Shown here: in pieces, positions 13,210 to 49,859 of the stretch
Numbering within the stretch: the stretch's first letter is position 1
How the letters are laid out: every line of letters begins with the position of its first letter
NCBI GenBank assembly: GCA_965637545.1
Contig: OZ281494.1
Span: forward strand, 3,410,001 to 3,474,000
Direction of reading: 5' to 3'
DNA from: Phallusia mammillata
Taxonomy: Eukaryota
DNA length: 64,000 bases
Made by a program: the position numbers and the translations under genes
The notes under the pieces: generated by a model
The model's database searches: none
What the model was told of the DNA's origin: nothing
Seen by the model: only the letters and a program-made list of their open reading frames with translations

Positions 13210-16200
13210 ATGGGTTTGAATTTGTCATTTAACATTAAATCTTGCTTTGTCTATTTCTGGATGTTGATCTTCGCTTCAGGCATTCGGGAAACTGTGCAAC
13301 AACACCCTGAACACTGTGGTAAGCGTTTGTTTTGATTTTATCGACCAAGTATGGTGTATTATGTTTAAAATGCCTGCTACCGTACCAAAACCTCCAGTCA
13401 GGATAACTGAGTGGAGAGTTGTAAGAATGCCGTGTTTTTACCAAAAACTAAAGGAGTTTAATTTTGTATTTCTTAATTTGTTTTTGTTTTTGTACCCTTA
13501 CTCTGCTTTTATCCCCTTACACTGTATTTGCTCGTTACATTTTGGGTTTAAGCATTGGATCGTCAACAAGTTTTTATGCAAACAAAACTTTTTGAACATA
13601 CAGTGCATGGGAAATTGAATTTTCTTTTCAAACATTTCATATCAGATTTTTTTTATATTTTACGATAACGAAAACATGCAATTGTGTTTGTTTATCAGAT
13701 CGTGGACCAAACAACTGTACAGTGTTTTTGTGCGACGTCGAAAGTAGCAAAGCATCCTGCGGTGAGTATGATCGTACAAATGCACTTACTGAGTGTCATT
13801 ATCAGCTATGTAGTTTGCTTAACTACCTTTTATGCTTGGCCCATAATGGTTCGTAAATTCCATATCTTATCAACATAGCAAGCTTTCTTTAACTTGTTGT
13901 GACACTTATGCGTTTTGAAAAGTGCATGTTTCTTTTTTGACAGTCTTTGCTCCACGCAATGTGTCTGAGTCGGTTTATATTGGCGTTGTTAAAAAATGTG
14001 AGTATTTCAATTATTTGCACATTCCATGTGACTTGAAATGAAAGTTTTGCAATGTTGTTTTAAAAGTTACTGCGGGCGCTGCTTCTGCACAGCTGGAGAT
14101 CTTTATTACCGGAGGTAAGCACCAAATTATCTTATTTGTAGTAATCACACATTTTATTGTCAATAATTGATACTAAAGTAAATCACCATCAAATTTAACG
14201 GAGTCTGTATGAGCAACTTAAGGCATATGTTGAAAACGTGGAATAAGTTTGTTACATTAAATCTCTTACAGAGCTAAGTTGTTGGGATTCGAGTTGTTGT
14301 ATGACAAACTTTACCCACATACCTGAAGATGTTGCGGTGAAACTTCAATTGTTAAGCGAAGGTAATTAGATAGTGAAATATAAATACTTACCTCCTTAAA
14401 GTGCGCAAATAATAAATGTTGAACTATTTCCAAACTAGGTACAAATCAAGAAGGTTGCAATATATAGGATATGTTGCATTTGAATGTTAAATGCATAGTA
14501 AATACAATAGGTTTAAATTTATACTCTTTTAACTTTTAGTTCCACGATCTGCATAACATACTTGTGCAAACTGATTATTATATTATGCGTACAATTACAT
14601 CTGTTTGGCAGATTCATTACATGAAGCCTTTGAAATTGAGACCATTGTTATAACGGATTTCCAACCTTGTAAGTATTTACATTGTTATTAATAGGTTTTG
14701 TGTCAAAATTACATGAAAAGACACTTATAAATTTGTGCCACTAAGTCTGTTTATTTTCTGTTTGGTGATGAAAGCATAATACAGTTACGTGGGTGAATAA
14801 TGTACGGACAGACGGGTGTGTAGTGTAAGATACAAACAAAGGACAAACACCAGTATGGTTAAATTTCTTAACTGAAAAGATGTATTTGCAAAGGTTTTCC
14901 TGGTGTCGATGCGGTGACATTGCCACAGAAATTGAAACAGAATTTCAACAAGTGCCTTAATTTATCATTATATTGTCGTAAGTAATTTTTCATTATGATA
15001 ACATAGCAATTACTGGAATCAAAAATTCTTTTTTCGTACCTCATGCATCTAGAAAATAAGCACGTTCAGACCAAAACGATGTGATTTTTTAAAGCTTTAT
15101 CAAACCCGAATAAACCAACCGCAGAACCACCAAACAAAAGTCCAAGCACACAAAAACCAATGACCAACCCTACTACAAAACAACCAACGATAAACCCAAC
15201 CACGTATCCAATAAGGGAGGGTATGTAAAAAAAGCATATAATTTGCCAGATTGAATATTGTGCTTCATTGACAATAAAACGTAACGTGCACTTTTTTGAC
15301 TAAAAAAAAACAATAGACAATTACTTTCAAATGTTGGTTAAATATAGTTTAAAAGTCTTTCATTTTCTAGAATTGGAATTTCTGGATAGATTTGTACTTT
15401 CGGAACCAAACAGTGTGGATGCTTTGGAGGAAATTGAAAAACAACTGGCAGATGTTGCAATATATTTTGCATCAATGAACGAATCAATTTCTGACGTTAG
15501 AAATTCTCAACTGCACCAAGTTTTTAAAATCAACCAAACTGAATATAACAAAAACTTCCAACTGGGGTCGTCGCACATAAGCATCTCATTCCAGACACTT
15601 AACGTAAAAAGAATTGTAACTTCCGTTCTCACCTTTCAAACAAATCGAACCGAAACAGTACAGACTCAACCCAACATACAAGGATCCCTTACTCAAACGC
15701 AATACATAGCTGCTGTAAATAGCACTTATATTGCTGTGGTTGGTTGGGATGCTGATCAACTTCTTAATTCAACCACCAGTCCCACGGTAGAAAACAATCA
15801 GCTACCCGGAAATGTGAGTTTCGTCATACCCCCAACGTCACCAACAACCATCTGCAAGCTGATCAAAGCGGGACATATATTCAATGCCAAACTAAATTTC
15901 AAAAAACTTGAACCAATCTGTCTCTTCTTCGACAGAGTTGATCGAAAATACTCAGACCGCGGTTGCGTCACAACCACTCATGACGTAACAGGCAACGTCA
16001 CTTGCAAGTGCAACCATCTTACTTTGTTCACAGTTTTACTGGCTGTCCAATCCACCACCATACCAAAGGGGGTCAAGGTAAAGATTTGAATGTGAATTTT
16101 GAAGCTATTGCTCACATTTATGCAGCATTTTTTTTTCAGATCACATCTTACACCACAGAATCAACTTCAGTCGTGTTTCTGATCTCCACCATAATAATCC

Positions 16201-17498
16201 TTTACAAATCGAAACACAACGGAGATCGGGTTTCTGTTCAAATCAGTTTGTCACTGGCTCTTCTGCTTTTCCACGCTGTCAACATATCACATGATCTTGC
16301 CGTGATGCATGAGATTCCATGCGTGATTCACACAGCAGTCAATCAATATCTTCTGCTATCTTCAGGTATATGAAGTAACAAACCAATTTACGATTTTAAG
16401 CGTTGATTTGTTCTGACGCAATATTTGTTGTAGGAATATGGTTGCTAATGGAAGGTATTCGTCTCTTTATGGCGACGTCGTATCCAGTCAAGTTCCGAAC
16501 CCAAAATCCGTCAAAACGTCTTAAAATCTTCATGATGATTGGTTGGATTGTTCCAGTCTTTGTAGTGGGAACATCCATGGCAGTGGGTTTTCCCCTCGAC
16601 ATCTACATGAAGCTCCAACCATTGTACGAGCAATGTAACGAATTTATACAGGTTCCAAAGTACGACAGATGCTGGTTGGCTCCCGGTACTCCAATCTTCT
16701 ACTCTTCGGTCATCGCTCCTCTTGCTCTCGTCATCCTCATCAACTTCATGATCATCCTGAAGACGACACATGTGATGCTGCACTCGAGGAAGATGCGGAA
16801 CAGAGGAGGTCCAGGGAGAGGAGATGCGTTGAGAGCAGCAAAGTCTTTCATGTTGCTCTTCTTCATGCTTGGTGGAGCTTGGGTTTTTGCTTTCTTTACG
16901 GGTAATATTTATGCGTGTGAACTTTTTAATTTTATTTGCAGCTGCATCAACTTAGGGTTATATCTTAACTACGAATCTCTTTTGACTTTTAGGGTTATAT
17001 CTTTAACTAGGAATCTGTTTTGTAGGTGTTGGAAACGAGATTTCGAACGAGGTGATCATGTACATCCACAGCTTGGTGAACGGATCGCAGGGAATTGTCG
17101 TCTTCCTGCTGTACTGCGTCATGGATGACGACATCAGACAGGAAATGCTGACGTGCAAGCGTGAAGCTGATGTTGGGCCGAAGCAGCAGAGAAACGGGGC
17201 CAAATCAAACGGAGGTGAAAGTTCAAATGCTAAAGGGGGTGAAATTTCAAAGGCGGAAATGGGTGAAAGTTCAAATGCGGAAAGGGGTGAAAGTTTAAAT
17301 GCGGAAAGGGGTGAAAATTCAAATGCGGAAAGGGGTGAAAGTTCAAATGCGGAAGAAGGTGAAAGTTCAAATGATGAAGGAGGTGAAAGTTCAAATGCGG
17401 AAGAAGGTGGAAGTTCAAATGCGGAAGAAGGTGAAAGTTCAAATGCTAAAGGGGGTGAAAGTTCAAATGCAGATGGAGGTAAGAGTTCAAAGATCTAG
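13210..17498 (+). CDS. Adhesion GPCR type A1: signal peptide, unassigned 10-Cys ectodomain, P/T stalk, GAIN/GPS, 7TM, repeat tail; about 834 aa, intact
   Basis: Exons: 13210-13318, 13699-13761, 13944-13997, 14067-14114, 14272-14361, 14612-14668, 14894-14977, 15095-15220, 15371-16077, 16140-16365, 16434-16901, 17026-17498. All introns are GT-AG, phases are consistent, total 2505 nt open. N-terminus MGLNLSFNIKSCFVYFWMLIFASG is hydrophobic. GPS reads GCVTTTHDVTGNVTCKCNHL/TLFTVLL. Secretin-like motifs include WLLMEG, CWL and VNGSQGIVVFLLYC. Confidence 0.9.
17214..17498 (+). repeat. Coding 24-bp tandem repeat (about 11.8 units, GESSNAEx) in the A1 cytoplasmic tail
   Basis: Unit GGTGAAAGTTCAAATGCGGAAAGG or variants repeated 11 times, plus a partial unit ending in the stop codon. 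Confidence 0.95.
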
Positions 17499-21328: not shown

Positions 21329-24300
21329 CGGGAAACTGTGCAACAACACCCTGAACACTGTGGTAAGCGTTTGTTTTAATTTTATCGACCAAGTATGGTG
21401 TATTATGTTTAAAATGCCTGCTACCATGCAAAAACCTCCAGACAGGATAACTGAGTGGAAAATGGGAAGAACGGCGTGTTTTTTATCCAAAAACTAAAGG
21501 AGTATAATTTTGTCTGAATGCGTTTTTGTACCCTTACTCTGCTTTTATCCCCTTACACTGTATTTGCTCGTTACAATTTGGGTTTAAGCATTGGATCGTC
21601 AAGTTTTTATGCAAATAAAACTTTTTGAACATACAGTACATGGGAAATTGAATTTTCTTTTCAAACATTTCATGTCAGATTTTTTTATTTTACAATAATT
21701 AAAACATGCAATTGTGTTTGTTTATCAGATCGTGGACCAAAAAACTGTACAGTGTTATTGTGCGAATATAAAAGTAGCAAAGTATCTTGCGGTGAGTATG
21801 ATTGTACAAATGTACTAATTGAGTGTCATTATCAGCTATGTAGTTTGCTTAGCTACCTTTTATGCTTGGCCCATAATGGTTCGTAAATTTCGTATCTTAT
21901 CAACATAGCAAAGTTCCTTTAACTCGTTGTGACACTCATTCGTTTTAAAAAGTGCATGTTTCTTTTCTGACAGTCTTTGCTCCACGCAACGTGTCTGAGT
22001 CGGTTTTTCTTGGCATCGTTACAAAATGTGAGTATCCTAATTATTTGCACATTCCATGCGACGTGAAATGAAAAGTTTTGCAATGTTGTTTTAAAAGTTA
22101 CTGCGGGCGCTGCTACTGCACAGTTGGAGATCTTTATTACCACAAGTAAGTACCAAATTATCTTATTTGTAGTAATCACACATTTTAGTGTCAATAATTA
22201 ATACTAAGGTAAATCAGCATCAAATCTAAACGGAGACAATATGAGCAACTTAAGGCATATATATGTTCAAAACAAGTTTGTTACATTAAATCTCTTACAG
22301 AGCTAAATTGTTTGGAATCGATTTGTTGTATGACAAACTTTACCCACATACCTGAAGATGTTGCGGTGAAACTTCAATTGTTAAGCGAAGGTAATTAGAT
22401 AGATAAATATGAATACTTACCTCCTTAACGTGCGCAAATAATAAACGTTCAACTATTTCCAAAGTAGGTACAAAGCAAGAAGGTTGCAATATATAGGATA
22501 TGTTGCATTTGAATGTTAAATGCATAGTAAATACAATAGGTTTAAATTTTTACTCTTTTAACTTTTAGTTACACGATCTGCATAACATACTTGTGCAAAC
22601 TGATATGATATTATGCGTACAATTACCTCTGTTTGGCAGATTCATTACATGCAGCCTTTGGAATTAAGACCATTGTTACAACGGATTTCCAACCTTGTAA
22701 GTATTTACATCGTTTTTTCAATTGTTATTAATAGGTTTTGGGTCAAAATTACATGAAAAGACACTTATAAATTTGTGCCACTGAGTCTGTAATTTTCTGT
22801 TTGGTGATAAAAGCATAATACAGTTACGTGGGAAATTATTTACGGACCGATATGTTTGTAGTGTAAGATACAAACAAAAGACAAACACCATTATGTTTAA
22901 ATTCCTTAAATGAAACGATGTATTTCCAAAGGTTTTCCTGGTGTCGATGCGGAGACATTGCCACAGAAATTGAAACAGAATTTCAACAAGTGCCTCAATT
23001 TATCATTATATTGTCGTAAGTTAATTTTCATTATGATAACATAGCAATCACTGGAACAAAAATTCTTTTTTCGTACCTCATGCATCTAAAAAATAAGCAC
23101 GTTCAAACCAAAACGATGTGATTTTTTAAAGCTTTATCAAATCCGAATATGCCAACCGCACAACCACCAAACCAAATTCCAAGCACACAAAAACCAATGA
23201 CCAAGTCAACTACAAAACAACCAACGATAAACCCAACCACGTATTCAATACAAGAAGGTATGTAAAATGCGCTTATATTTTGCCAGATTGTATACTGTGC
23301 TTCATTGACAATAAAACGTAACGTACACTTTTTTGACGAAAAAAAAACAATAGACCAGTGGTTCTCAAACTTTTTTTGTTGCGACGCCTCTGGAAAAGTT
23401 TTCTGGACTTGCGACGCACCATCAAATAAAAGTTAATGAGGAAACTTATCAATAAACAGTTAAGCACTTAGAGAACAATCTTAGCCTAACTGTTTTTCGA
23501 CAAAGTTATAAGACTGCACTCAACACTTTCAGTACACCCGGCAATCACGTGCGGGCTTTTGTTAATTGTTTCAATTATTGCGCACAGTTGCATTGTCTTG
23601 TCTGCAGCAAGGCCTTAACAGCATCAATAACGAATTACAACGAAAGTAATGTTTCACCTTACGCACAATACAAACTGATGCAAAAAAATTTACTGCTGTA
23701 ACTCATGCACAATAATTACTTCAAACTTTGCTGACAATTATAAGTTATAACTACCTCAAGCCTTTGAAGCGAGAATCCGTTCACATAATCAAGTTTAATG
23801 CCCGCCAAGCGTCGCCCCAGACACGCGCCTATCACGCACTTGTTGCTTGTACTGTTTGGTCTCAACGGACAGCCGCATTTTTGATCAAAAACTTATTGGG
23901 TAAATTTACGTCAATCCGCACTCTACACAAAAAGTATTTGGACGTAGATATACGTCAACCGCACTGAAACCTCATTTTTACGAGATAAACTGAGTTCAGC
24001 CACGAAACGGAAATATTCTGCGACGCCCTTGGAAAATAGAAACGACGCACCAGGGCGTCGCAACGCACAGTTTGAGAACCACTGCAATAGACAATTACTT
24101 TCAAATGTTGGTTAAATATAGTTTAAAAGACTTTCATTTTCTAGAATTGGAATTTCTGGATAGATTTGTACTTTCGGAACCAAACAGTGTGGATGCTTTA
24201 GAGGAAATTGAAGAACAACTGGCAGAAGTTGCAATATATTTTGCAACAAAGGACGAATCAGTTTCTGACGTTAGAAATTCTCATCTGCACCAAGTGTTAA

Positions 24301-26881
24301 AAATCAACCAAACTGAATATAACAAACACCTCAAACTGGGGTCGTCGCACATAAGCATCTCATTCCAGACACTTAACGTAAAAAAAATTGTAACTTCCGT
24401 TCTCACCTTTCAAACAAATCGAACCGAAACAGTACAGACTCAACCCAACATACAAGGGTCCCTTACTCAAACGCAATACATAGCTGCTGTAAATAGCACT
24501 TATATTGCTGTGGTTGGTTGGGATGCTGATAGACTTTCGAGTTCAAACAGTCGCACGGTAGAAAACAATCAGCTACCCGGAAATGTGAGTTTCGTCATAC
24601 CTCCTATGTCACCAGAAAGGGTCTGTATGCTGATTAGGGAGGAAAAAATCAACAATGCGAACATGAATATCAAGAAACTGGGGCCAATATGTCTCTACTT
24701 CGATAGAGTTGAAAGAAAATACTCGGATCGTGGTTGCGTCACAATCACTGATGACGTAACAGGCAACGTCACTTGCAAGTGCAACCATCTCACTATTTTC
24801 ACCGTTCTTTTGGCGTTGGAATCAGTCACCATACCTGATGGTGTAAAGGTGAAGACATTGTTGTAGAAGTGATGTTTAAAACTATTAACTAGCAGTAGTT
24901 TGCATTGGATCTTTCCTCTGGTAAAGTGCAGTAAAGTGCAACGTGACCGTACGACGTGTTTTATTTACTTTGCTTTTCTCTTTTATTTGATGCCAAGTTT
25001 TTGATACTTGGTATGTCATTATACTTTTTCCTTCCTACACAGAAATGAGGTTAACTTTTGTTGAATGATGTAACATATCACTTAGTCAGATCTATATCAA
25101 AACATTTGTGACCATCTGATATATATACTTGTTTGAATGGGTAGGGCGTGTTTTTAAAAGTTATACTGGTTAACATAAAGCATAATGTGCTGTATAGTTT
25201 AGTACAAATAGTGAAGCAATGTTTTTGCCTCAAACACAGTTCCATAAATGAGTCATACATATACTTAACACATGCCTTCATATTTCCCTATTTTCTATTA
25301 AATTCAATCATCTTTTGTCTAACAAGTGCATATATTTAACGATGAAATTAATATTTTGTTTTCAGTATTTATCCTATGCCACAGAGACGATCTCGGTGTT
25401 CTCTCTTTTTGCGACAATCGCAATCCTCTACAGATACAGGCGAGGTGAAGACAGATTCCCGGTTCAAATCAATCTGTCAGTTTCACTTATGCTTCTCCAT
25501 TCGGTGAACTTGATGCACGATCTTGTAGTGATGCATGAAACATCATGTGTCACTTTTGCTTTAGCCAACCACTGGCTCCTGTTGTGTGTAGGTGAGTTAC
25601 TGTCGAACATAATAGAATACTCACGACTAAAAGTAGAAGTTTTACAATTTAAACACCGATTGTAAACGTTTTAGAGTGTTACAAACGGCGCTTGTTCTGT
25701 TTAAGTGGCGTATATCTACACAGTTACAGCTCCCTTTATCCAATTTGGAATTATCACAGGATTTCAATATTCTCTGTAAAGTCTGTCTTTAATGCTTAAC
25801 GATCTATTGGCAAAGTCAGAAATGAGTACAAACGATATCGTATTAACAGTAAGCTTAATCATAACTTGTTTGTTGCAGGAATGTGGTTCCTTGTTGAAGG
25901 ACTCCGCCTCCTAATGGCAACCTCCTTTCCGTACATTTTTGGAGCTCAAGATCCAGAAACACGTCTTAAGATCTTTATGCTGATTGGTTGGATTGTTCCC
26001 GCTTTTGTAGTTGGCTTATCAGCGGGTGTGGGTTTTTCCCTCGGCGCCTACATGAAGCCCCAACCGTTGCACGAGCAATGTAACGAATTTATGCCGGTTC
26101 CAAAGTACGACAGATGCTGGTTGGCTCCCGGTACCCCGATCTTCTACTCCACGGTCGTCGCTCCTCTTGCTCTCGTCCTCTTTACCAACTTCATAATCAT
26201 CCTGAAGACGACTCATGTGATTCATAACCTGAGGAGGTTGCCCAACAGAGAAGAGGAAGACAATAAAGGAGCTGCAAAATCCGTGCTTGTTTTCTTTGTC
26301 ATGCTTGGAGGGACTTGGATTTTAGCTTTCTTCACAGGTGGGTTTACATCAAGCCTAATAGCCACACGCTTGAGTTAAATTGACTGTTTCGCTTGGTCAA
26401 AGAATATATAGCAACACAGTTACATTCAAAGAACCAAGAGTTCGGAAATAACAGCGAAACGTTAAAATGTTATGAACGCTGCAGCTACACCGTATTATAA
26501 GCGTTATGTGACTGGTGCATACAAAAAAGTGATGTCAAAAAACACGACTGGGGAGACGTTGGTGGAACCAGTTTAGAGGGCCCTAAAACTAACCAACCGA
26601 GTAATGCTAAGAGGGTTGGGCTCGAAACTTACTAATAGCTTAGCGGCCTAATTTTGTGTGTGCTTTCTTTACTGGTTATTTATTGATGCTTTTAAACTCC
26701 ATAATTTCCATGTTTAATATCGTCGCAATAAGTTTTAAGTTTTTAATGCTAGGAGACACATGTGCTTTATCAATAAATCTCTCTTGCAGGAATCGGGAGC
26801 GAGATTTCGAACGAGGTGTTCATGTACATCCATGCCTTGGTGAACGGATTGCAAGGAATCGTCGTCTTCCTGCTGTATTAA
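21329..26881 (+). CDS. Adhesion GPCR type A2: exons 2-12 open, start codon and signal peptide deleted, no cytoplasmic tail; possible pseudogene
   Basis: Colinear with A1. GAIN exon 24145-24848 (CKCNHL/TIFTVLL); 7TM exons 25366-25591, 25879-26337 and 26790-26881, ending ...GIVVFLLY-TAA. The ATG and signal-peptide part of exon 1 is replaced upstream of 21329. Confidence 0.8.
23356..24084. mobile_element. Non-autonomous hAT (Buster-like) element in the A2 intron
   Basis: TIR CAGTGGTTCTCAAACT. TSD caatagac at 23348-23355 and 24085-24092. Empty paralogous site at 15311-15318. Confidence 0.95.
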
Positions 26882-28528: not shown

Positions 28529-31500
28529 ATGCCGTTTATTTTGAGAGTTTCATTGGTGCGTTTAGTAGCTGGAATGCTCTTTCTTCTGCCAGTTTCGATT
28601 TGGGGTAAGTGGCTTGATTTTTAAAACCTATGATATAAAAGTGCATCTGTAAGTTTCCTAAACTGATAAGTTATAACTTATTTAGCGTTTGCACAAACAT
28701 TGTAAAGTAAATCGGTTTAGAAACAATTTAGAAAAACATAGTCAAAAATGTTTAAAAAATCTGAAGAAATGGTGATTATTACTTTGTCGTAATTTTCAGG
28801 TTTTTATTTTTCAGCTCAAGTACCTCTTTTGACCGGCTGTCTGGGGGAAATAAACAACACCCGATGCATCGGTAAAAATTATGTTACAAGAAACTAGAAT
28901 GAATTTAGCTGTTTTATAGAGAAATATACAAACTTTTTGATTTTTAAATTAGTTTGTGAAGGAAATTGGTTGTTTATCCCCTGCCCTGATGGAACAGTTA
29001 TTGACATAAAATCAGCTCTTTATGGTCATGAATTTCCTTACGCAGGGTAAGTAAATTTAACATCGTGGATTTCATAGATTTTTTTTTCTCAAACGATCCA
29101 ATTATGATATAAACAGATAAATTTTGAAATTGTGAGCTGCAACTTTTAGTTTTTATAATGTATAAAAACATTTTTTTGTACTACAGTTGCCGAACGGCTT
29201 TAAAGTTAAGCAAGTTTTAACATAGCTTTTGGAATGAAATATTGAGATTTATTGGGTGTTTTATTCATACAAAAAGTATTATTTACAAAATTGCATTTTG
29301 TTTTCACTATTGGTTTGTAAAGTTTTGCAAATATTTAATCTCTACATTTTTTGGATAAGGGTGTTGCTCACGGTCAACGACAAAGAAGATGTTTAAACCA
29401 ACTTGTATTCAGTCAGTATTAAATCCGAAATTCTGTACTCGTAGCGACTTTGCAAACTATCATTTTGGTCTGAACAATCGTACTTTGCGTTTACTTTGAC
29501 TCGGTAAATCCAATTCAAAATGATATGTTGTGTTTAAAGAGTGTGCAGGATGACTTCCCCTACGGCCCAATGCAATGGAACTGATGGAGTAACAGAGATA
29601 CTTAGGAAGTGTCAACAAAAACCTCGGTGCGTAATTATTCAATCAGCCATTCCTGGTGACCCATGTTCTGGTTTCGTCAAATACATAGACATCAACATGA
29701 CATGCTCCTTTCCCAGAGGTTGGTTTTAATATCAATATTGCGCGGCATCACACCAATTAACACCCGTAATATTACCATCAAACGCAACATGTATAACAGA
29801 AAGTAATTCGGTACTTATTTTTCCAAGTTTTCTCGCCATCATGTTACCTTTCACGCTAGGTTTGGTTTGTCGTTTGTTGTTATACACAGCTTAGTATTTG
29901 CAATATTTAGTTTATCGAGAGTACAGGCGAATGGATGCTTTAAGAAGCGTTTTGTTGTTGCAGCTCTATCGTTTATGAAAGACTTAAAAAATGTGAATCC
30001 GGCAAATTCTGAGGCATTAGAAAACGGGGAAGATAGAATTGGAAAGTTTTCCCGAAATCATCTTGATACCAGTGGAGTCAACTATACAACCGGAGATGCT
30101 CAACTGCACATCGTGGTTTCCAACATCAGTCAGGAAGCATTTAACTCATTCCTTCAGTTAGAGTCATCTCACATTGACTTTACACTGCAAACAAACAGCA
30201 CCAATCGTACAGTGAGTGCAGTTCTAACCTTTAAAATAAGCAAGACAGAAGCTGCAGAAACCATGTTCAACAACGCCAGTTTTCTCTCCGCCAAAACGCG
30301 CTACATAAGCACCCAGAATACAAGCTTCTTCGTTATTGTTGGCTGGGACGACAATGACAACCGGTTGCCTGGGAACGCGAGCATCATTGTCAATTCTACG
30401 TCACCGAAATCGGTCTGCGAGAAGATCAAAGAAGAAAAGAAGAACACAAGCAATCTGATGGTCAAAAAACTAGAACCGAAATGTTTGTTTCTAGACATGG
30501 TGACAAAAACGTACTCGGACAAGGGTTGTGTCACAATCACTGATGACGTAACAAGCAGAGTCACGTGCAAATGCAGTCATCTTACCATTTTCACTGTTCT
30601 GCTGGCTGTGGAAACCACCGTTATACCGGAAACTTTGAAGGTAGGCAAAACACAAGTGTGCTTGATACAGACTTGAATTGAGCTTATTTCGCTTGGTGAA
30701 AGACAACATAGACAACAAATGTGGCGGGTACGAATGGTTGATAATGGCTGAACGCGCCGGAGGCTGCAGCTACACTGTTTTGGGGCCTTGTAAGCCGATA
30801 TATGCATGATGGGAGTTTGGGCGCCAGTTCAACTCAGTCTTAGGAATTAAAGACCAAATTTGAGCTCTAATTCAAAAGGGCTTCGACTTAAAGTAAAGCG
30901 GTCAATTAAAACACATGTCTACCTGACTTCCACATTATCAAGTCAACCAGTTCAGGCCTAAATAGCCCTTTCATAAGATGGTTGCAAACTTGTTTTTTTC
31001 CTAAATTCCCACTATTATTCTATTTTCAGATCATATCATACACAACTGAATCCATCTCTGTCGTGTTTCTGGTGGCTACCATAGTGATTCTCTTTAAATA
31101 CGGACGGGGCGATGACAGGACTCCAGTTCAAATCAACTTGTCAGTGGCTCTTCTGCTTCTTCACGCCATCAACTTGACCCATGACGTTGCTGTTTTGCAT
31201 ACAACTGTGTGTGAGGTTTTCACAGTAACCCTTCATTTCATCTTACTGTCTGTAGGTAAGCTGTCAACCAGCTGATTTACTATCTGATCTAGATCATTCA
31301 AGGGTAAGCAAACTATTAAAAAGTAAAATTAATCTCGGTTGCTCCCTTAGAAATAATTTCTGGATCCGCCCTTGCTATACTTACATTACAACCTGCCATC
31401 TTCGTGAAGAAAAACTTTTGTTGTTGTTGTGTTTAGGAATGTGGTTTCTGATTGAAGGAGTCCGCCTCCTAATGGCAACTTCTTTTCCATATTCTTTTGA

Positions 31501-34500
31501 GGCTCAAGATCCGAAAACTCGACTTAAGATTTTCGTTTTCATTGGTTGGATTGTTCCTGCTCTTATAGTGGGACCAGCCGGGGGTGTCGGTTTTTTCCTT
31601 GACATCTACATGAAGCCCCAACCCTTATATGAAAAATGCCACAACCACCAAAATCAATCTTCACCGATTCCAAAGTATGACAGATGCTGGTTGGCTCCCG
31701 GTACTCCGGTCTTCTACTCCACGGTCGTCGCTCCTCTTGCTCTCGTCCTCCTTATCAACTTCATGATCATGCTGAAGACGACACACGTATTGTTCAAAAC
31801 GAGAAAAATGCAGAGCAGAGATGAAAATGATACCGTGATGATTGCTATGAAAGGAGCCAAGTCCTTCTTCCTCTTGCTCCTGATGCTCGGAGGAACATGG
31901 GGTCTAGCATTCTTCACAGGTTGGTCGATTGAGACAATTTAAAATGTAGAGTGGTTGTATTCAACCAGTGTGTATGGAAAATCATTCATAAAATGCACAT
32001 AGTTAATAATATTTAGGTTATAACTTTATCTGTTTATGCTTTTTTTATGTTTTTCATGGTTGCTATGTTTGAAGCTTGTTTAAACCAGGATTGCGGCATA
32101 ACAGGTTTATTATTATTATTATTATAGTTTCCCACGCTCTTGGGCGCATTGGGCAGCAAGATTGTTCCACTTTTTTCTGTCTTTTGCAATTTCCTCTATC
32201 TCCTTTATGTTTAACCCTCTCATTTCTAGATCTTTGCGGAAAGTCTCCCTCCAGGTAAGCTTTGGTCTACCTCTTTTTCTTTTCCCTTGCGGTGTCCAGC
32301 TCATAGCGATTTTTGGAGCCCGTTCGTCTGACATGCGTAACACATGCCCTGCAAGTCTAAATCTCCGCGTCGACATGATGGTGCATAAAGGCTTGGTACC
32401 ACTAATTTGGTACACCTCATCATTTGTAATGTGGTCCTTGTATGTGATATTTAGGATCCTTCGAAGACAACGCTGATGGAAAGCGTTTATGTGCTTTTTC
32501 AGCTTGACTGTCATTTTCCAGGTTTCACTGGCATATAGAACGGTGGGCATTACAATTGACTGGTACAGTTTGATCTTTACCAGTTTCGAAACCTTCGAGC
32601 TTGACCAAACTGTTTTGAGCCTTCTGAAGGCCGAAGCAGCTTTTCCGATGCGGGCATTTATGTCGGCCTCCACATCAGCATCTGTTGTGAACACACTGCC
32701 AAGATAGGTAAAGCTTGTGATGTTGTTAATAGGCTCAATTCCATTGATGGTTAAATGTACGTTGGACTGAGTTTCCCCTCCAACTCGAAGTAACTTAGTC
32801 TTGTCGCTGTTGATCGTCAGACCGGCTGTTGCTGCATTTTTGGCCAATGAGTTGGTCATTTCTTGAAGATCTGTCATCGACTCTGCGAGCAAGGCGATGT
32901 CATCTGCAAAGTCGAGATCCGTAAGACGCTTGTGGTTTGTCCATGAGATGCCGAACTTTGGATAATTCATTGCCTTTCTCATCACATAGTCGATAGTGGT
33001 AATGAATAGTAGGGGTGATAAGACACAGCCTTGGCGCACACCTGTGTTGATTCTAAAGAACTCTGTGTTTCCTGACTGAACTTTTACGCAGCAGCTTGAT
33101 CCTTCGTAGATGTTTTTGAAGGTATCTATAAACCTGAGTGGAACACCGTATTTTTGTAACACCTGCCATACAGTGTTGCGATGCACACTATCAAATGCCT
33201 TCCTGAAGTCAATGAAGTTGACAAACAGGGGTTTCTGAAATGCAAGGCACTGCTCCACAATGTTTCTGAGAACAAAGATCTGGTCACAGCACGACCTGTT
33301 GTATCGAAAGCCTGCCTGTTCTTCTCTCAACTTCTCATCTAAGGATGTCTTTAATCTGTGCAGAAGCACGCAGCAGAACACTTTCCCTGGAACAGATAGC
33401 AGTGTGATTCCTCGCCAATTACCACAAATGCCTAGATTTCCCTTTTTTGGAAGTTTCACAATTACTCCTTTTTTCCAATCAGATGGTACAGTCTGCATTT
33501 TCCAACATAAGTTGCATAGCTTTGTCAACTGTGCAATCAGTGCATTCCCTCCATTTTTTAGCATCTCAGCAGAAATTTGGTCGAGACCTGCAGCTTTGTT
33601 GTTTTTGAGTTTTTTCAGTGCACTGGAAATTTCTTCTGTTGTGATGTCACCCATATCTACTTCCATCGTTGGTCCATCTTCATCTTCAAAAGTAGGCAGT
33701 TCGTAAGGTTCTGGTTGGTTCAGAATTTCCTTAAAGTGTTCGTACCATCGCATGTTTTGTTCTTCCTCGGTTAGAAGAGTTTTTCCAGTTTTGTCCTTAA
33801 TTGGTACACCGGAGCTTTTTCCTGTCTTTGTCAGATGCCTAATTATTCCAAATAGCGCTCTAGTGTCATTTCTGTTCATTGCTTTCTGTGCGTCCGCACA
33901 TAGCGTTTCAGTCCAAAACTTTTTGTCGTCTCTACAACTCTTTTTAACAACTTTGTGTGCTTGTTCGTACTGTTTTCCTATCTTCCAGTATTCATCAGAA
34001 GATTTGGCGCTTTCCCTTTCATGTTTAATCTTTCTTCTCTGATCAATCAATGCCCATGTTTGTGGTCGAATCCAGCTTTCCCTTCTCGTCCCGCGCCTTC
34101 TGCCGAGGGTTTGATCTGCAGCTGTTGTCACTATTTTTTGAAATTGTTTCCATTGCTCTTCAATATTATCTTTTACTTGTACAGCCTGGAATCTTGTGCT
34201 CAAATTTTTGTGAAACATTTTTACTATTTTTTGATCTTTTAGTTTTATAAGGTCGTATGGTTTTGTTCCACTGTGTTTGATAATTTTTTTCAGTTTTAGT
34301 TTCAGTGACCCTTTGACGAGGTAGTGATCGGAGGCTACGTCTGCACCTCTGCAGCTACGTACATCCTGCAGTGCGCTGCGCCATCTTCTGCATATGCAAA
34401 TGTAGTCAATTTCACTTGTTGTTTTGCCGTTTGGGGATTTCCAGGTTTGCTTGTGTATTCGTTTGTGATTAAAAAAAGTGTTCCCTATACATAACTCGTT

Positions 34501-35741
34501 TGTACTGCAGATGGTAAGAAGTCTGTGCCCGTTGTTGTTAGTTTTGCTTGCTACACCGAATGGTCCTAAGATGTCACTCCAACCAGCTCTGTTTCCATCA
34601 ATCTGTGCGTTAAAATCGCCCATTAATAATTGTAGATCATGTTTAGGGATACCATTTAATGTATCCTGGAGCTGGTCATAAAACAAATCCTTTTCTGACT
34701 CTTCTGCCTCTTCTGTAGGGGCATACACCTGAACAATAGATGTTTTCCCATGGCGCGAGTGAAAACGTGCAGTAATTATTCGATCACTGATTGGTTTCCA
34801 TCCAACCAATGCCTGATTTGCTTCATGGTCCAGCACGAACCCAACACCATGTATATGCTGTTTGTTGTGTCCCGAAAAGACAACTGTCTTTCCCTCGCTA
34901 GTCAGTTTGCCACTTCCAATCCATCTCATTTCACTAACACCGAGAATATTTAATCCGTAGGTGTGAAACTCGCGCAATACTTGCGCCAATTTTCCACATT
35001 GGAACAAAGTTCTTACATTCCAGGTTGCTAGTTTTGTAATTGTTGTAGCAGAGAATATGTTGCTCTTCATCGGGACCAGAGCTTCCCTGGGGCTTTCACC
35101 CTGGCCCGTCATGAATGATTGGGTCGAACACACATTCCTGCCACTGCTTAAAGTAGTAACTCTTCTTGCTGTTTCTGTAGCGGTAAATTGTTTTACGGGG
35201 TCGGGTTGCTGGCCCGACGCCCAACCCTCCTTCTTTTTCAGCCGGGCTTGGGACCGTCCTTGGCGAAGTTCATTCATAAAATGCACATAGTTAATAATAT
35301 TTAGGTTATAACTTTATCTGTTTATGCTTTTTTTATGTTTTTCATGGTTGCTATGTTTGAAGCTTGTTTAAACCAGGATTGCGGCATAACAGGTTTACCA
35401 CTCTATTTTTGTAATGTTGATAATTTACGGTTTTTTCTGTAGTTCGATTTGCAACAATGGGGTTAATGGCTGTGTCAAATTGACGAAAAACACTTGAAAC
35501 CCTCAGATATAAACACATGAGTTCTGTTTTTTGTTTTGCAGGAATTGGGAACGAGATTACGAACGAGGTGTTCATGTACATTCACACCTTGGTGAACGGA
35601 TCGCAAGGAATCGTCGTCTTCCTGCTGTACTGCGTCATGAGTCACATGATAAGACAGGAAATTGTGCCTTGTAAGCGTGAAGCTGATGGGTCTGAGCAGC
35701 AGAACAACACAGCAAACACTACTGATGGAAACCGACACTAA
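28529..35741 (+). CDS. Adhesion GPCR type B1: signal peptide, SUEL/Gal_lectin domain, GAIN/GPS, 7TM; about 663 aa, intact
   Basis: Exons: 28529-28604, 28815-28871, 28953-29046, 29540-29718, 29964-30640, 31030-31255, 31437-31919, 35542-35741; 1992 nt open. Lectin domain VCEG..PCPDGTVIDIKSALYG...GDPCSGFVKYIDINMTC has 8 Cys. GPS reads CKCSHL/TIFTVLL. An RTE LINE lies in the last intron. Confidence 0.9.
32110..35269 (-). mobile_element. Full-length RTE-clade non-LTR retrotransposon with 128-bp TSD
   Basis: Single APE+RT ORF, (TAA)n tail, and a twister motif at the 5' end. Identical 128-bp direct repeats at 31982-32109 and 35270-35397. Empty paralogous site in B2 at about 49390-49517. Confidence 0.95.
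32122..35112 (-). CDS. RTE ORF: apurinic endonuclease + reverse transcriptase, about 996 aa from the likely ATG (MTGQGES...)
   Basis: Motifs ATWNVRT, GVSEMRW, YAPT, GDFNA and SDH (endonuclease); WRGITLL, QAGFR, DFRKAFDSV, GVRQGCVLSP and FADD (RT); C-terminal KRKRGRPK. No stops. The tracked ORF start at 35286 lies in the TSD and is not the element's own start. Confidence 0.95.
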   Translation of the reverse strand: MTGQGESPREALVPMKSNIFSATTITKLATWNVRTLFQCGKLAQVLREFHTYGLNILGVSEMRWIGSGKLTSEGKTVVFSGHNKQHIHGVGFVLDHEANQALVGWKPISDRIITARFHSRHGKTSIVQVYAPTEEAEESEKDLFYDQLQDTLNGIPKHDLQLLMGDFNAQIDGNRAGWSDILGPFGVASKTNNNGHRLLTICSTNELCIGNTFFNHKRIHKQTWKSPNGKTTSEIDYICICRRWRSALQDVRSCRGADVASDHYLVKGSLKLKLKKIIKHSGTKPYDLIKLKDQKIVKMFHKNLSTRFQAVQVKDNIEEQWKQFQKIVTTAADQTLGRRRGTRRESWIRPQTWALIDQRRKIKHERESAKSSDEYWKIGKQYEQAHKVVKKSCRDDKKFWTETLCADAQKAMNRNDTRALFGIIRHLTKTGKSSGVPIKDKTGKTLLTEEEQNMRWYEHFKEILNQPEPYELPTFEDEDGPTMEVDMGDITTEEISSALKKLKNNKAAGLDQISAEMLKNGGNALIAQLTKLCNLCWKMQTVPSDWKKGVIVKLPKKGNLGICGNWRGITLLSVPGKVFCCVLLHRLKTSLDEKLREEQAGFRYNRSCCDQIFVLRNIVEQCLAFQKPLFVNFIDFRKAFDSVHRNTVWQVLQKYGVPLRFIDTFKNIYEGSSCCVKVQSGNTEFFRINTGVRQGCVLSPLLFITTIDYVMRKAMNYPKFGISWTNHKRLTDLDFADDIALLAESMTDLQEMTNSLAKNAATAGLTINSDKTKLLRVGGETQSNVHLTINGIEPINNITSFTYLGSVFTTDADVEADINARIGKAASAFRRLKTVWSSSKVSKLVKIKLYQSIVMPTVLYASETWKMTVKLKKHINAFHQRCLRRILNITYKDHITNDEVYQISGTKPLCTIMSTRRFRLAGHVLRMSDERAPKIAMSWTPQGKRKRGRPKLTWRETFRKDLEMRGLNIKEIEEIAKDRKKWNNLAAQCAQERGKL
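35220..35270 (-). ncRNA. Twister ribozyme motif (3' cleavage product) at the RTE 5' end
   Basis: Minus strand reads AA-CTTC-GCC-AAGGA-CGG-TCCC-AAGC-CCG-GCTGAAAAA-GAAG-GAGGG-TTGGG. This matches the twister layout AA-P2-GCC...CGG UCCC AAGC CCG..AAA-P2'-GAGGG-P1', with P2 formed by CTTC/GAAG. Confidence 0.85.
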
Positions 35742-40437: not shown

Positions 40438-43400
40438 ATGGGTTTGAATTTGTCATTTAACATTAAATCTTGCTTTGTCTATTTCTGGATTTTGATCTTC
40501 GCTTCAGGCATTCGGGAAACTGTGCAACAACACCCTGAACACTGTGGTAAGCGTTTGTTTTAATTTTATCGACCAAGTATGGTGTATTATGTATAAAATT
40601 GTTTCTACCGTGCCAAAACCTCCAGTCAGGATAACTGAGTGGAAAATGGCAAAAATGTCGTGTTTTTTAACCAAAAACTAAAGGAGTGTAATTTTGTCTG
40701 AATTTGTTTTTGTTTTTGTACCCTTACTCTGCTTTCATCCCCTTACTCTGTATTTGCTCGTTACAATTTGGTTTTAAGTATTGGATGGTCAAGTTTTTAT
40801 GCAAACAACACTTTTTGAACATACAGTGCATGAGAAATTGAATTTTCTTTTCAAACATTTCATATCAGATTTTTGTATATTATACAATAATTAAAACATG
40901 CAATTGTGTTTGTTTATCAGATCGTGGACCAAACAACTGTACAGTGTTTTTGTGCGACGTCGAAAGTAGCAAAGCATCCTGCGGTGAGTATGATTGTACA
41001 AATGCACTTATTGAGTGTCATTATCAGCTATGTAGTTTGCTTAACTACCTTTTATGCTTGGCCCATAATGCTTCGTAAATTTCGTATCTTATCAACATAG
41101 TAAGGTTCCTTTAAGTCGTTGTGACACTCATGCGTTTTGAAAAGTGCATGTTTCTTTTCTGACAGTCTTTGCTCCACGCAACGTGTCTCAACCTGTTTTT
41201 ATTGGCATCGTTGAAAACTGTGAGTATTTTAATTATTTGTACATTCCATGTGACGTGAAATGAAAGTTTTGCAATGTTGTTTCAAAAGTTGTTGCGAGCG
41301 CTGCTTCTGCACAGTTGGAGATCTTTATTACCGCAAGTAAGTACCAAATTATCTTATTTGTAGTAATCACACATTTTAGTGTCAATAATTGATACTAAAG
41401 TAAATCACCATCAAATTTAACAGAGTCTGTATCAGCAACTTAAGGCATATATGTGTTCAAAACGTGGAAGAAGTTTGTTACATTAAATCTCTTACAGAGC
41501 AAAATTGTTTGGATTCGAGTTGTTGTATGACAAACATTACTCACAAACCAAAAAGTACGATGGTGAAACTTCAATTGTTAAGCGAAGGTAATTAGATAGA
41601 AAAATATGAATACTTACCTCCTTAACGTGCCAAATAATAAACGTTTAACTATTTCCAAACTAGGTACAAATCAAGAAGGTTGCAATATATAGGATATGTA
41701 GCATTTGAATGTTAAAGACATAGTAAATACAATAGGTTTAAATTTTTACTCTTTTAACTTTTAGTTACACGATCTGCATAACATACTTATGCAAACTGAT
41801 ATGATATTATGCGTACAATTACCTCTGTTTGGCAGATTCATTAGATGCAGCCTTTAGAATTAAGACCATTGTTACAACGGATTTCGAAGCTTGTAAGTAT
41901 TTACATCGTATTTTTACATTGTTATTAATAGGTTTTGGGTCAAAATTACATGAAAAGTTACCTATAAATTTGTGCCACTGAGTCTGAAATTTTCTGTTTG
42001 GTGATAAAAGCATAATACAGTTACGAAGGAAATAATTTACGGACAGATGGATGTGTAGTGTAAGGTACAAACAAAGGACAAACACCAGTATGTTTAAATT
42101 TCTTATGAAACGATGTATTTGCAAAGGTTTTCCTGGTGTCGATGCGAAGACGTTGCCACAGAAATTGAAACAGAATTTCAACAAGTGCCTTAATTTATCA
42201 TTATATTGTCGCAAGTTATTTTTCATTATGATAACATAGCAATTACTGGAAAAAAAAATTTTTTTTTCGTACCTCATGCATCTAAAAAATAAGCACGTTC
42301 AAACCAAAACGATGTGATTTTTTAAAGCTTTATCAAATCCGAAAAAGCCTACCGAACAACCACCAAACCAAATTCCAAGTACACAAAAACCAATGACCAA
42401 CTCAACTACAAAACAACCAACGATAAACCCAACCACGTATTCAATACAGGAAGGTATGTAAAAAACATATATATTGTCAGATTGTATATTGTGCTTCATT
42501 GACAATAAAACGTAACGTGCACTTTTTGACGAAAAAAAAACAAAAATATTACTTTCAAATGTTGGTTAAATGCAGTTTAAAAGTCTTTCATTTTCTAGGA
42601 TTGGAATTTTTGGGTAGATTTGTACTTTCGAAACCAAACAGTGTGGATGCTTTGGAGGAAATTGAAGAACGACTGGTAAAAGTTGCATTATATTTTGCAA
42701 CAAAGGACGAATCAGTTTCTGACGTTAGAAATTCTCAACTGCACCAGGTGATAAAAATCAATCGAACTGAATATAACAAAAACCTAAAACTGGGGTCGTC
42801 GCACATAAGCATCTCATTCCAGACACTTAACGTAAAAAAAATTGTAACTTCCGTTCTCACCTTTCAAACAAACGAAACCGAAGCGGCACAGACTCACCCC
42901 AACATACAAGGGTCCCTTACACAAACGCAATACATAGCTGATGTAAATAGCACTTATATTGCTGTAGTAGGTTGGGATGCTGATCAACTTTCGAGTCACC
43001 GGAAACTGTCTCAGGATTTCAATATTCTCTGTAAAGTCTGTCTTTAATGCTTAACGATCTATTGGCAAAGTCAGAAATGAGTACAAACGATATCGTATTA
43101 ACAGTAAGCTTAATCATAACTTGTTTGTTGCAGGAATGTGGTTCCTTGTTGAAGGACTCCGCCTCCTAATGGCAACCTCCTTTCCGTACATTTTTGGAGC
43201 TCAAGATCCAGAAACACGTCTGAAGATCTTTATGCTGATTGGTTGGATCATTCCCGCTTTGGTGGTTGGCATATCAGCGAGTGTGGGGTTTCCCCTCGGC
43301 ACCTACATGAAGCCCCAACCGTTGCACGAGCAATGTAACGAATTTATGCAGGTTCCAAAGTACGACCGATGCTGGTTGGCTCCCGGTACCCCGATCTTCT

Positions 43401-49100: not shown

Positions 49101-49859
49101 GGCTCCCGGTACTCCGATCTTCTACTCCACGGTCGTCGCTCCTCTTGCTCTCGTCCTCCTTATCAACTTCATGATCATGCTGAAGACGACATACGTATTG
49201 TTCAAAACGAGAAAAATGCAGAGCAGAGATGAGAATGATACCGTGATGATTGCTATGAAAGGAGCCAAGTCCTTCTTCCTCTTGCTCCTGATGCTCGGAG
49301 GAACATGGGGTCTAGCATTCTTCACAGGTTGGTCGATTGAGACAATTTAAAATGTAGAGTGGTTGTATTCAACCAGTGTGTATGGAAAATCATTCATAAA
49401 ATGCACATAGTTAATAATATTTAGGTTAGAACTTTATCTGTTTATGCTTTTTTTATGTTTTTCATGGTTGCTATGTTTGAAGCTTGTTTAAACCAGGGTT
49501 GCGGCATTACAAGTTTACCACTCTATTTTTGTAATGTTGATAATTTACGGTTTTCTGTAGTTCGATTTGCAACAATGGGGTTAATGGCTGTGTTAAATTG
49601 ACGAAAAACACTTGAAACCCTCAGATATAAACACATGAGTTCTGTTTTTTGTTTTGCAGGAATTGGGAACGAGATTACGAACGAGGTGTTCATGTACATT
49701 CACACCTTGGTGAACGGATCGCAGGGAATCGTCGTCTTCCTGCTGTACTGCGTCATGAGTCACATGATCAGACAGGAAATTGTGCCTTGTAAGCGTGAAG
49801 CTGATGGGTCTGAGCAGCAGAACAACACAGCAAACACTACTGATGGAAACCGACACTAA
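46144..49859 (+). CDS. Adhesion GPCR type B2: signal peptide, SUEL lectin domain, GAIN/GPS, 7TM; about 663 aa, intact
   Basis: Exons: 46144-46219, 46491-46547, 46631-46724, 47031-47209, 47453-48129, 48438-48663, 48845-49327, 49660-49859. All have the same lengths as in B1. GPS reads CRCSHL/TIFTVLL. Confidence 0.9.

What the first reader, a model, noticed from the sequence alone, without database searches (positions are those of the whole stretch)
15853..16636. Two extra unpaired cysteines, one in a GAIN loop and one in ECL2, conserved in both receptor types: possible covalent tether between the cleaved halves
Seen: all four copies with a complete GAIN have the four GPS Cys plus one extra Cys in an insertion about 22 residues upstream (TGC/TGT at 15853, 24624, 30416, 47905). 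All five copies have the usual ECL2 CW Cys plus one extra Cys in a lengthened ECL2 (16634, 26079, 31637, 49045, and A3). The other extracellular Cys are even in number: 10 in the A ectodomain, 2+8 in B, and the TM3-ECL2 pair. Exactly two are left over in both subfamilies. The HL/T autoproteolysis motif is intact. Known: aGPCR tethered-agonist activation normally involves a non-covalent NTF-CTF association. Inference: a GAIN-ECL2 disulfide could lock the NTF on the 7TM after cleavage, giving a redox- or force-gated activation mode I do not know from described aGPCRs.
Basis: inference. Interest (0 to 1): 0.75.

Follow-up and report, generated by a model that had tools for sequence, protein, structure and literature searches.

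The report
Possible disulfide staple across GPS cleavage
A sea-squirt family of adhesion receptors always carries two extra cysteines, one on the self-cleaving outer (GAIN) domain and one on a loop of the membrane domain; they probably bond to each other and would then hold the two cleaved halves together covalently, which is not described for this receptor class and is still untested.

Summary
The window holds five tandem adhesion-GPCR genes of an ascidian; the nearest database proteins are from Phallusia mammillata.

**Observation.** The even cysteine counts claimed for the N-terminal ectodomains could not be reproduced.

**Where the two cysteines sit.**
- The GAIN cysteine lies in a helix inserted in the s9s10 loop. 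Cryo-EM work on ADGRL3 reports this loop as facing the 7TM.
- The second lies in a short helix of a long ECL2 that AlphaFold2 predicts with high confidence.

**Conservation.**
- All seven genes in which both regions can be read have both cysteines. This includes one gene from another ascidian sample.
- In ten sequences the GAIN cysteine is the only invariant residue in about 35 variable residues. Relatives carry mostly polar residues there (S/Q/E/D, also L/A), so the site is probably exposed.
- The carriers form one clade, so this counts as one evolutionary event.
- The sister clade (Clavelina) has a different pair: top of TM1 plus ECL2.
- More distant relatives have neither cysteine.

**Cleavage.** The known sequence determinants are intact: HL|T, an aromatic residue at S10.49, and Gly before GPS Cys2.

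**Verdict.** A cis GAIN–ECL2 disulfide is the best reading, at about 0.4. The tools returned no model coordinates, so the S–S distance was not measured. No RNA or biochemical data exist. It would be a new variant of a known kind. Another array in this genome carries an unchecked note of the same pattern.

The parts
15317..16077 (+). A1 GAIN exon: end of subdomain A, all of subdomain B, GPS and Stachel
   Evidence: Pfam GPS hit. Acceptor atag|AC in phase 1 and donor AAG|gtaaag. Aligns with P0001.
15853..15855 (+). A1 surplus GAIN cysteine (TGC), in the helix inserted in the s9s10 loop, 22 residues before GPS Cys1
   Evidence: Equivalent to Cys189 of P0001, which lies in helix 186-198 of the AlphaFold2 model.
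15919..16023 (+). A1 GPS core: Cys1 15919, Cys2 15964, Cys3 16003, Cys4 16009, then N-H-L|T (H-L-T codons 16015-16023). An aromatic residue sits at Cys1+2 and a Gly before Cys2.
   Evidence: Determinants as defined in PMC13062082.
16140..16365 (+). A1 exon for TM1 to the first half of TM3, with the TM3 disulfide Cys at 16320
16434..16901 (+). A1 exon for the second half of TM3 to TM6, holding ECL2
   Evidence: Pfam 7tm_2. Splice sites.
16634..16636 (+). A1 surplus ECL2 cysteine (TGT), 12 residues before the canonical CW cysteine at 16670
   Evidence: Equivalent to Cys406 of P0001, at the end of ECL2 helix 401-406 (pLDDT above 90).
17026..17498 (+). A1 exon for TM7 and a repeat-rich tail
24105..26881 (+). 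A2 from GAIN to TM7 (exon ends 24848, 25366-25591, 25879-26337, 26790-26881). Surplus Cys at 24624 (GAIN) and 26079 (ECL2).
29945..35741 (+). B1 from GAIN to TM7 (exon ends 30640, 31030-31255, 31437-31919, 35542-35741). Surplus Cys at 30416 (GAIN) and 31637 (ECL2).
47437..49859 (+). B2 from GAIN to TM7 (exon ends 48129, 48438-48663, 48845-49327, 49660-49859). Surplus Cys at 47905 (GAIN) and 49045 (ECL2).
42559..44163 (+). A3, a truncated copy. The GAIN exon breaks off near 43044, before the s9s10 helix and the GPS, and no TM1-3 exon is seen. The ECL2 surplus Cys is kept at 43334.

Best explanation
These genes encode adhesion GPCRs of an ascidian-specific clade. In this clade the GAIN domain sits almost directly on the 7TM: in the models the Stachel strand runs into TM1 with about two residues between them.

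The clade gained two cysteines on its conserved GAIN-7TM part. One is in a helix inserted in the GAIN s9s10 loop, which belongs to the N-terminal fragment. The other is in a short helix of a lengthened ECL2, which belongs to the C-terminal fragment. The most likely reading is that they form an intramolecular disulfide that staples the GAIN domain onto ECL2.

The sequence determinants of GPS autoproteolysis are intact. The staple would therefore keep the two fragments covalently joined after cleavage. Shedding of the N-terminal fragment, and full release of the tethered agonist, would then need reduction of this bond. Otherwise signalling would have to run without dissociation.

**Shown:** the positions, the invariance, the co-occurrence, the fold and the cleavage motifs.
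**Inferred:** the bond itself, the cleavage and any gating.
For: 1. **Co-occurrence.** All 7 genes in which both regions are readable have both Cys: A1, A2, B1, B2, P0001 and P0005 of Phallusia, and contig L004 from another ascidian sample. Three further GAIN-only fragments have the GAIN Cys. Three further 7TM-only sequences and A3 have the ECL2 Cys. No sequence has one without the other.
2. **Invariance.** In a 10-sequence alignment the GAIN Cys is the only invariant residue in the roughly 35 residues between the S9 motif L-x-G and the S10 motif P-x-C. In ECL2 only Q-P, this Cys and Y-D-R-C-W-L are invariant.
3. **Exposure.** In relatives without the Cys, that column holds S, Q, L, E, A, D, T, K, R and others. 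The flanking -1 and +3 positions stay hydrophobic. This is the pattern of a surface position, not a core one.
4. **Shared part.** Carriers have three unrelated N-terminal ectodomains: type A, type B (no cross-hits) and a weak C-type-lectin match in P0005. A conserved partner should therefore lie on the shared GAIN-7TM part, and the ECL2 Cys is the only other surplus Cys there.
5. **Geometry.** GPS Cys1 is S10.47, so the surplus Cys lies in the s9s10 loop. ADGRL3 residues S810/E811 of that loop face the 7TM in the holoreceptor cryo-EM model (PMC11697300, PMC11615224).
6. **Models.** AlphaFold2 gives pLDDT 89.6 and pTM 0.84 for P0001, and pTM 0.72 for P0005. Both Cys lie in confidently predicted helices. 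The pTM values suggest a fixed GAIN-7TM arrangement.
7. **Sister clade.** Clavelina P0009/P0116 carry a different surplus pair: a Cys at the top of TM1 plus an ECL2 Cys six residues earlier. More distant relatives have neither.
8. **Cleavage determinants.** H-L|T, an aromatic residue at S10.49 and Gly before Cys2 are present in 10 of 10 sequences (criteria from PMC13062082).
Against: - No S-S distance could be measured, because the structure tool returns no coordinates.
- Foldseek aligns the model to the inactive CD97 holoreceptor 8IKJ only as two domains in a different mutual orientation (TM 0.49, rmsd 12.6). The predicted arrangement therefore has no experimental counterpart.
- All carriers form one clade (100/100). 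Co-occurrence is one event, or two if the Clavelina pair is counted.
B is unresolved. P0001 and P0005 look N-terminally incomplete, since neither has a signal peptide.
- RNA runs of the species showed no coverage of the locus.
- Cleavage and disulfide formation are untested. The literature describes the association of the two fragments as non-covalent throughout (PMC13197933).
Confidence: 0.4

Rival explanations
1. Both surplus cysteines stay unpaired. They could act as free or redox-sensitive thiols, or as metal ligands, without forming a GAIN-ECL2 bond.
For: - No structural distance is available.
- Several ECL2s have His next to the Cys: C-H-N-H in B1/B2, C-H-K-H in P0125 and C-H-K-Y in P0123/P0124. 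This could be part of a metal site.
- Free cysteines do occur in extracellular domains.
Against: - Two exposed unpaired Cys that are invariant in a secreted-pathway protein are unusual.
- The A-type and P0001/P0005 ECL2s lack the His.
- The GAIN Cys column is mostly polar and variable in relatives, so a hydrophobic-core role is unlikely.
Confidence: 0.2
2. The cysteines form intermolecular disulfides. These would give covalent receptor dimers or oligomers, or a covalent bond to a partner protein.
For: - Both positions appear surface-exposed.
- From my own recollection, not checked here, disulfide-linked dimers have been reported for one adhesion GPCR (Ig-Hepta/ADGRF5).
Against: - Two sites on the same face of a compact GAIN-7TM unit, gained together, are explained more simply by one cis bond.
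- The sister clade pairs ECL2 with the top of TM1 of the same chain.
Confidence: 0.15
3. Each cysteine has another partner. The s9s10 Cys would bond to a Cys of the N-terminal ectodomain, as GAIN C177 bonds to PLL C121 in ADGRG1. The ECL2 Cys would be free or bond elsewhere.
For: - The ADGRG1 PLL-GAIN disulfide is a precedent (bioRxiv 10.1101/2025.08.14.670383; PMC13197933).
- The Cys parity of the ectodomains is not settled.
Against: - Carriers have three unrelated ectodomain types. A partner would have to be re-invented in each.
- The ECL2 Cys would be left unexplained although it always co-occurs with the GAIN Cys.
Confidence: 0.12
4. The GAIN-ECL2 disulfide exists but the GAIN domain is not cleaved in vivo. 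The bond would then be only an interdomain staple of a single-chain receptor, with no cut to tether across.
For: An H-x-S/T motif alone does not guarantee cleavage: ADGRB2 has HLS and is not cleaved (PMC13062082).
Against: The additional determinants named in that paper are present in all ten clade sequences: an aromatic residue at S10.49 and Gly before Cys2.
Confidence: 0.12

Closest known systems
Canonical cleaved adhesion GPCRs (ADGRL1/L3, ADGRG1, ADGRE5/CD97)
   Same: - GAIN fold with GPS and two GPS disulfides.
- H-L|T site and a Stachel of the T-x-F-x-x-L-L type.
- 7tm_2 domain, TM3-ECL2 disulfide and the C-W-L triad.
- The s9s10 loop faces the 7TM in ADGRL3 (PMC11615224, PMC11697300).
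   Different: - In the known receptors the two fragments are held together non-covalently only (PMC13197933).
- Here a surplus Cys on each fragment could add a covalent link.
- The linker between Stachel and TM1 is almost absent.
- The s9s10 loop and ECL2 are both lengthened.
ADGRG1/GPR56 interdomain disulfide PLL C121 - GAIN C177
   Same: A surplus GAIN cysteine bonds to a cysteine outside the GAIN domain and fixes the arrangement of the domains (bioRxiv 10.1101/2025.08.14.670383; PMC13197933).
   Different: In ADGRG1 both cysteines lie in the N-terminal fragment, so the bond does not cross the cleavage site. Here the candidate partner is in ECL2 of the C-terminal fragment.
Engineered disulfide locks in the ADGRG1 GAIN domain (SS_h2l10, SS_h1h2)
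   Same: They show that a disulfide restraining GAIN loops near the 7TM changes the GAIN-7TM interface, mechanical resistance and signalling. In those models ECL2 is the main 7TM contact of GAIN (bioRxiv 10.1101/2025.08.14.670383).
   Different: They are artificial, lie within GAIN and do not reach ECL2. The case here would be natural and would join GAIN to the 7TM.
[quoted passage not shown] 2012, known to me only from the reference list of PMC13197933)
   Same: It is a precedent, by title, for redox control of the release of an adhesion-GPCR ectodomain fragment.
   Different: The paper could not be read here. It concerns thrombin-induced shedding, not a GAIN-ECL2 bond. The details are unverified.
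Sister clade in Clavelina lepadiformis (P0009/P0115, P0116)
   Same: - Same ascidian subfamily.
- Same s9s10 helix insertion and long ECL2.
- Also exactly one surplus ECL2 Cys plus one surplus partner.
   Different: The partner sits at the extracellular end of TM1, inside the C-terminal fragment. The ECL2 Cys is six residues earlier. That pair would not cross the cleavage site.

Membership tests
Adhesion GPCR (class B2) | GPS motif with four cysteines at the end of a GAIN domain | tested here: met
   Pfam PF01825 is above its cut-off for A1, A2 and B1. Four C-x-C-x-H-L-T motifs are present. The AlphaFold2 model has helices followed by a beta-sandwich. The best PDB match is the inactive CD97 holoreceptor 8IKJ, E 1.5e-17.
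Adhesion GPCR (class B2) | Secretin-type 7TM domain directly after the GAIN domain | tested here: met
   Pfam PF00002 hits. Spliced models with canonical introns match P0001. Foldseek hits to ADGRD1, ADGRG2 and ADGRL3 7TM structures give target-normalised TM-scores of about 0.8.
Adhesion GPCR (class B2) | Conserved TM3-ECL2 disulfide cysteines and the C-W-L triad | tested here: met
   TM3 Cys and Y-D-R-C-W-L are present in all copies. The triad is as described in PMC9489211.
Cleavage-competent GAIN domains | H-x-S/T triad, an aromatic residue at S10.49 and Gly before GPS Cys2 | tested here: met
   H-L-T (H-L-S in P0004), F or Y at Cys1+2 and G-C are present in 10 of 10 clade sequences. The criteria come from PMC13062082.
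Cleavage-competent GAIN domains | [quoted passage not shown] | not testable with these tools
   This needs a western blot of expressed receptor.
Hypothetical class: adhesion GPCR with a covalent bond between N- and C-terminal fragments | One surplus exposed Cys on each fragment, always co-occurring | tested here: met
   7 of 7 genes with both regions have both. There is no one-without-the-other case. The column is mostly polar and variable in relatives.
Hypothetical class: adhesion GPCR with a covalent bond between N- and C-terminal fragments | The two sulfurs lie within bonding distance in the folded receptor | tested here: inconclusive
   The models are confident (pTM 0.84 and 0.72), and the s9s10 loop is the literature's 7TM-facing loop. 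No coordinates were returned, so no distance was obtained.
Hypothetical class: adhesion GPCR with a covalent bond between N- and C-terminal fragments | All other extracellular Cys are paired (even count) | tested here: inconclusive
   The GAIN-7TM part leaves exactly two surplus Cys. N-terminal ectodomain counts are not established.

The most novel reading that the evidence does not exclude
A natural clade of adhesion GPCRs is autoproteolytically cut at the GPS, yet its two fragments stay joined by a GAIN(s9s10)-ECL2 disulfide. The receptor then cannot shed its N-terminal fragment unless the bond is reduced. It would signal either without dissociation, by force transmitted straight into ECL2, or after reduction by an extracellular thiol oxidoreductase.
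Probability: 0.3. Interest if true: 0.75.

Novelty: new variant of a known kind. Interest (0 to 1): 0.55.

Why it matters
The field still debates how adhesion GPCRs are activated. One view is that the N-terminal fragment must dissociate to free the tethered agonist. The other is that the intact complex signals allosterically.

A natural receptor whose halves are covalently stapled at the GAIN-ECL2 interface would bear directly on this. It would be obliged to use the non-dissociative route, or to add a redox step. The two sites could be tested by simple Cys-to-Ser mutations.

It would also mark s9s10-ECL2 as a real contact in a holoreceptor. That contact has so far been inferred from low-resolution cryo-EM, FRET and simulation.

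If the cysteines prove to be free or to form dimers, the finding is a minor family-specific feature.

Tried and rejected
1. **S-S distance.** Two AlphaFold2 jobs ran well. The tool returns only confidence and secondary structure, and no model file appears in /data. My attempts to deduce strand directions from disulfides and published contacts gave contradictory answers, so I dropped them.
2. **RNA evidence.** The two runs that hold the locus are DNA, with even depth over introns. The two RNA-guess runs I laid (X3, X8) cover only repeats at 12111-12153 and 12681-12755. No splice or expression data resulted.
3. **Word-index protein search.** It was saturated by generic adhesion-GPCR words and gave few clade members. 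The exhaustive profile search found only five close GAIN relatives.
4. **Contigs of the other ascidian sample (DRR090687).** L001 and L003 stop just before ECL2, and L005 starts just after the s9s10 helix. Only L004 spans both sites.
5. **Parity.** Ab initio phase-1 exon chains for A1 give 6 or 7 Cys, not 10. B is unresolved. I first counted P0001 as a complete minimal receptor with exactly two surplus Cys. I withdrew that because its N-terminal hydrophobic helix aligns with GAIN subdomain A of A1, so it is not a signal peptide and the protein is probably 5'-incomplete.
6. **Buried-core cysteine.** Rejected, because relatives carry mostly polar or charged residues in that column.
7. **Foldseek against the PDB.** It confirms the fold but not the domain orientation.
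Full report
**What is in the window.**
- The + strand carries five tandem adhesion-GPCR genes. Four have C-x-C-x-H-L-T GPS motifs and five have TM3-6 exons with the ECL2 C-W motif.
- Pfam confirms GPS and 7tm_2.
- I built gene models from the GAIN exon to TM7 for A1, A2, B1 and B2. All introns are AG/GT, and all junction positions match a database protein (P0001) from Phallusia mammillata.
- A3 is truncated. Its GAIN exon breaks off before the GPS, and no TM1-3 exon is seen.
- Earlier notes of this scan call the genome Phallusia mammillata. The closest database proteins are from that species, but they are paralogues, not products of this window (48-51% identity in GAIN, 64-70% in the 7TM).
- A1/A2/A3 and B1/B2 are young duplicates whose introns are also 80-97% alike. 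Agreement among them says little. Only A versus B, and comparison with sequences from outside the window, is informative.

**The observation.**
The surplus GAIN Cys are at 15853, 24624, 30416 and 47905. The surplus ECL2 Cys are at 16634, 26079, 31637 and 49045, and at 43334 in A3. The canonical CW Cys lies 12 (A) or 16 (B) residues later, and the TM3 partner Cys is present.
- The stalk, ECL1 and ECL3 hold no Cys. The GAIN-7TM part therefore has 5 + 3 extracellular Cys. Three canonical pairs leave exactly two.
For A1 I found a signal-peptide exon at 13210-13318 and a chain of phase-1 micro-exons. It gives 6 mature Cys, or 7 with another donor. B stayed unresolved.
- No RNA covers the locus in the runs available.

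**Where the two cysteines sit.**
- GPS Cys1 is position S10.47 in the generic GAIN numbering (GPR56 C346; PMC11697300). The surplus Cys, 22 residues upstream and after strand S9, is therefore in the s9s10 loop.
- In this ascidian clade that loop is about 30 residues long and contains a helix. Vertebrate ADGRG4/G6 have about 11 residues there.
- AlphaFold2 models were made with an 87-90-sequence alignment. P0001 gave pLDDT 89.6 and pTM 0.84. P0005 gave pTM 0.72 despite a disordered N-terminus.
- In both models the GAIN Cys is in the first turn of the s9s10 helix, and the ECL2 Cys is in a short ECL2 helix with pLDDT 82-94.
- In both models the Stachel strand runs into TM1 with about two residues between. 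Together with the pTM values, this suggests a fixed GAIN-on-7TM arrangement.
- The literature names the s9s10 loop as the GAIN region that interacts with the 7TM. [quoted passage not shown]
- In ADGRG1 models ECL2 is the main 7TM contact of GAIN (bioRxiv 10.1101/2025.08.14.670383).
- The tools return no coordinates, so I could not measure the S-S distance.
- Foldseek's best PDB match is the inactive CD97 holoreceptor 8IKJ, but with a different domain orientation (TM 0.49, rmsd 12.6).

**Relatives.**
- An exhaustive profile search with the four GAIN exons found 98 proteins. Only five are close.
- The s9s10 Cys occurs only in those five: P0001 and P0005 from Phallusia, and P0002-4 from one other ascidian sample.
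- Both Phallusia proteins also have the ECL2 Cys.
- One contig of the other sample, L004, holds a GAIN exon and an ECL2 exon of one gene. Both Cys are present.
- Three 7TM-only sequences (P0123-5) all have the ECL2 Cys.
- In total, 7 of 7 genes readable at both sites have both, and none has one alone.
- About ten more distant ascidian relatives, several from Clavelina lepadiformis, share the helix insertion and the long ECL2 but have neither Cys.
- In a 10-sequence alignment the GAIN Cys is the only invariant residue in about 35 residues.
- Relatives carry S, Q, L, E, A, D, T, K and R in that column, while the neighbouring -1 and +3 positions stay hydrophobic. This is the signature of an exposed position. 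It argues against a buried free cysteine.

**Phylogeny.**
- The carriers form one clade (100/100). Its sister (91/91) is a Clavelina pair.
- That pair lacks the s9s10 Cys. It has a surplus Cys at the extracellular end of TM1 and a surplus ECL2 Cys six residues earlier.
- So in two sister lineages a surplus ECL2 Cys comes with exactly one surplus Cys near the GAIN exit or the top of TM1. This fits ECL2 being disulfide-tied to that region.
- These are at most two evolutionary events, so the co-occurrence has little statistical weight.

**Partner logic.**
- Carriers have three unrelated N-terminal ectodomains: type A, type B (no cross-similarity) and a weak C-type-lectin match in P0005.
- A partner in the variable ectodomain, like the PLL-GAIN bond of ADGRG1, would have to be re-created each time.
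- The only other surplus Cys on the shared part is the ECL2 one.

**Cleavage.**
- Beyond H-L|T, all ten clade sequences have an aromatic residue at S10.49 and Gly before Cys2.
- PMC13062082 finds these two residues characteristic of cleavage-competent receptors.
- Cleavage is therefore likely, but it is not shown.

**Conclusion.**
- The best explanation is a cis disulfide between the s9s10 helix of GAIN and ECL2 (about 0.4). If the GPS is cut, it would covalently tether the two fragments.
- Rivals are free or metal-binding thiols (some ECL2s read C-H-x-H), intermolecular bonds, other partners, and a staple in an uncleaved receptor.
- A 2026 review describes the association of the two fragments as non-covalent (PMC13197933). 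My literature searches found no natural GAIN-ECL2 bond.
- If real, this is a new variant of a known kind.
- The scan holds an unchecked first-reader note of the same pattern in another adhesion-GPCR array of this genome (s1-382302).

Noticed in passing
P0009, P0115, P0116 (Clavelina lepadiformis proteins; not in the window): The sister clade has its own surplus pair: a Cys at the extracellular end of TM1 (G-V-K-[IL]-C-S-Y) and an ECL2 Cys (K-P-C-Y-L). This suggests an ECL2-to-TM1 disulfide that would lid the agonist pocket.
   Followed up: partly
window 42559-44163: A3 looks like a broken copy. Its GAIN exon ends near 43044 without the s9s10 helix or GPS and runs almost directly into the TM3-6 exon (43133 onward). 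TM1-3 is missing.
   Followed up: partly
window 27565-27810: There is a stray TM1-TM3 exon, 87% identical in protein to that of A1 but lacking the start of TM1. It lies between A2 and B1, away from any GAIN exon, and is probably a duplication remnant.
   Followed up: no
window 17150-17495: The cytoplasmic tail of A1 is a run of imperfect 8-residue repeats (G-E-S-S-N-A-E-x). A2 stops right after TM7, and the B genes have a short non-repetitive tail.
   Followed up: no
window 31640-31651 and 49048-49059; also P0123-P0125: In B-type and several other ECL2s the surplus Cys is followed by His-rich motifs (C-H-N-H, C-H-K-H, C-H-K-Y). This could be part of a metal site. A-type ECL2s read C-N-E-F.
   Followed up: no
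window 31920-35541: The last intron of B1 is 3.6 kb, against 0.33 kb in B2. An earlier scan note places an RTE retrotransposon here.
   Followed up: no
window 13210-13318: The first coding exon of A1 has a clear signal peptide (M-G-L-N-L-S...I-F-A-S-G), followed by phase-1 micro-exons and a Pro/Thr-rich linker exon at 15095-15220.
   Followed up: partly
window 12111-12153 and 12681-12755: These short stretches have very high depth in DNA runs and are the only parts covered in the RNA-guess runs. They are probably dispersed repeats.
   Followed up: no
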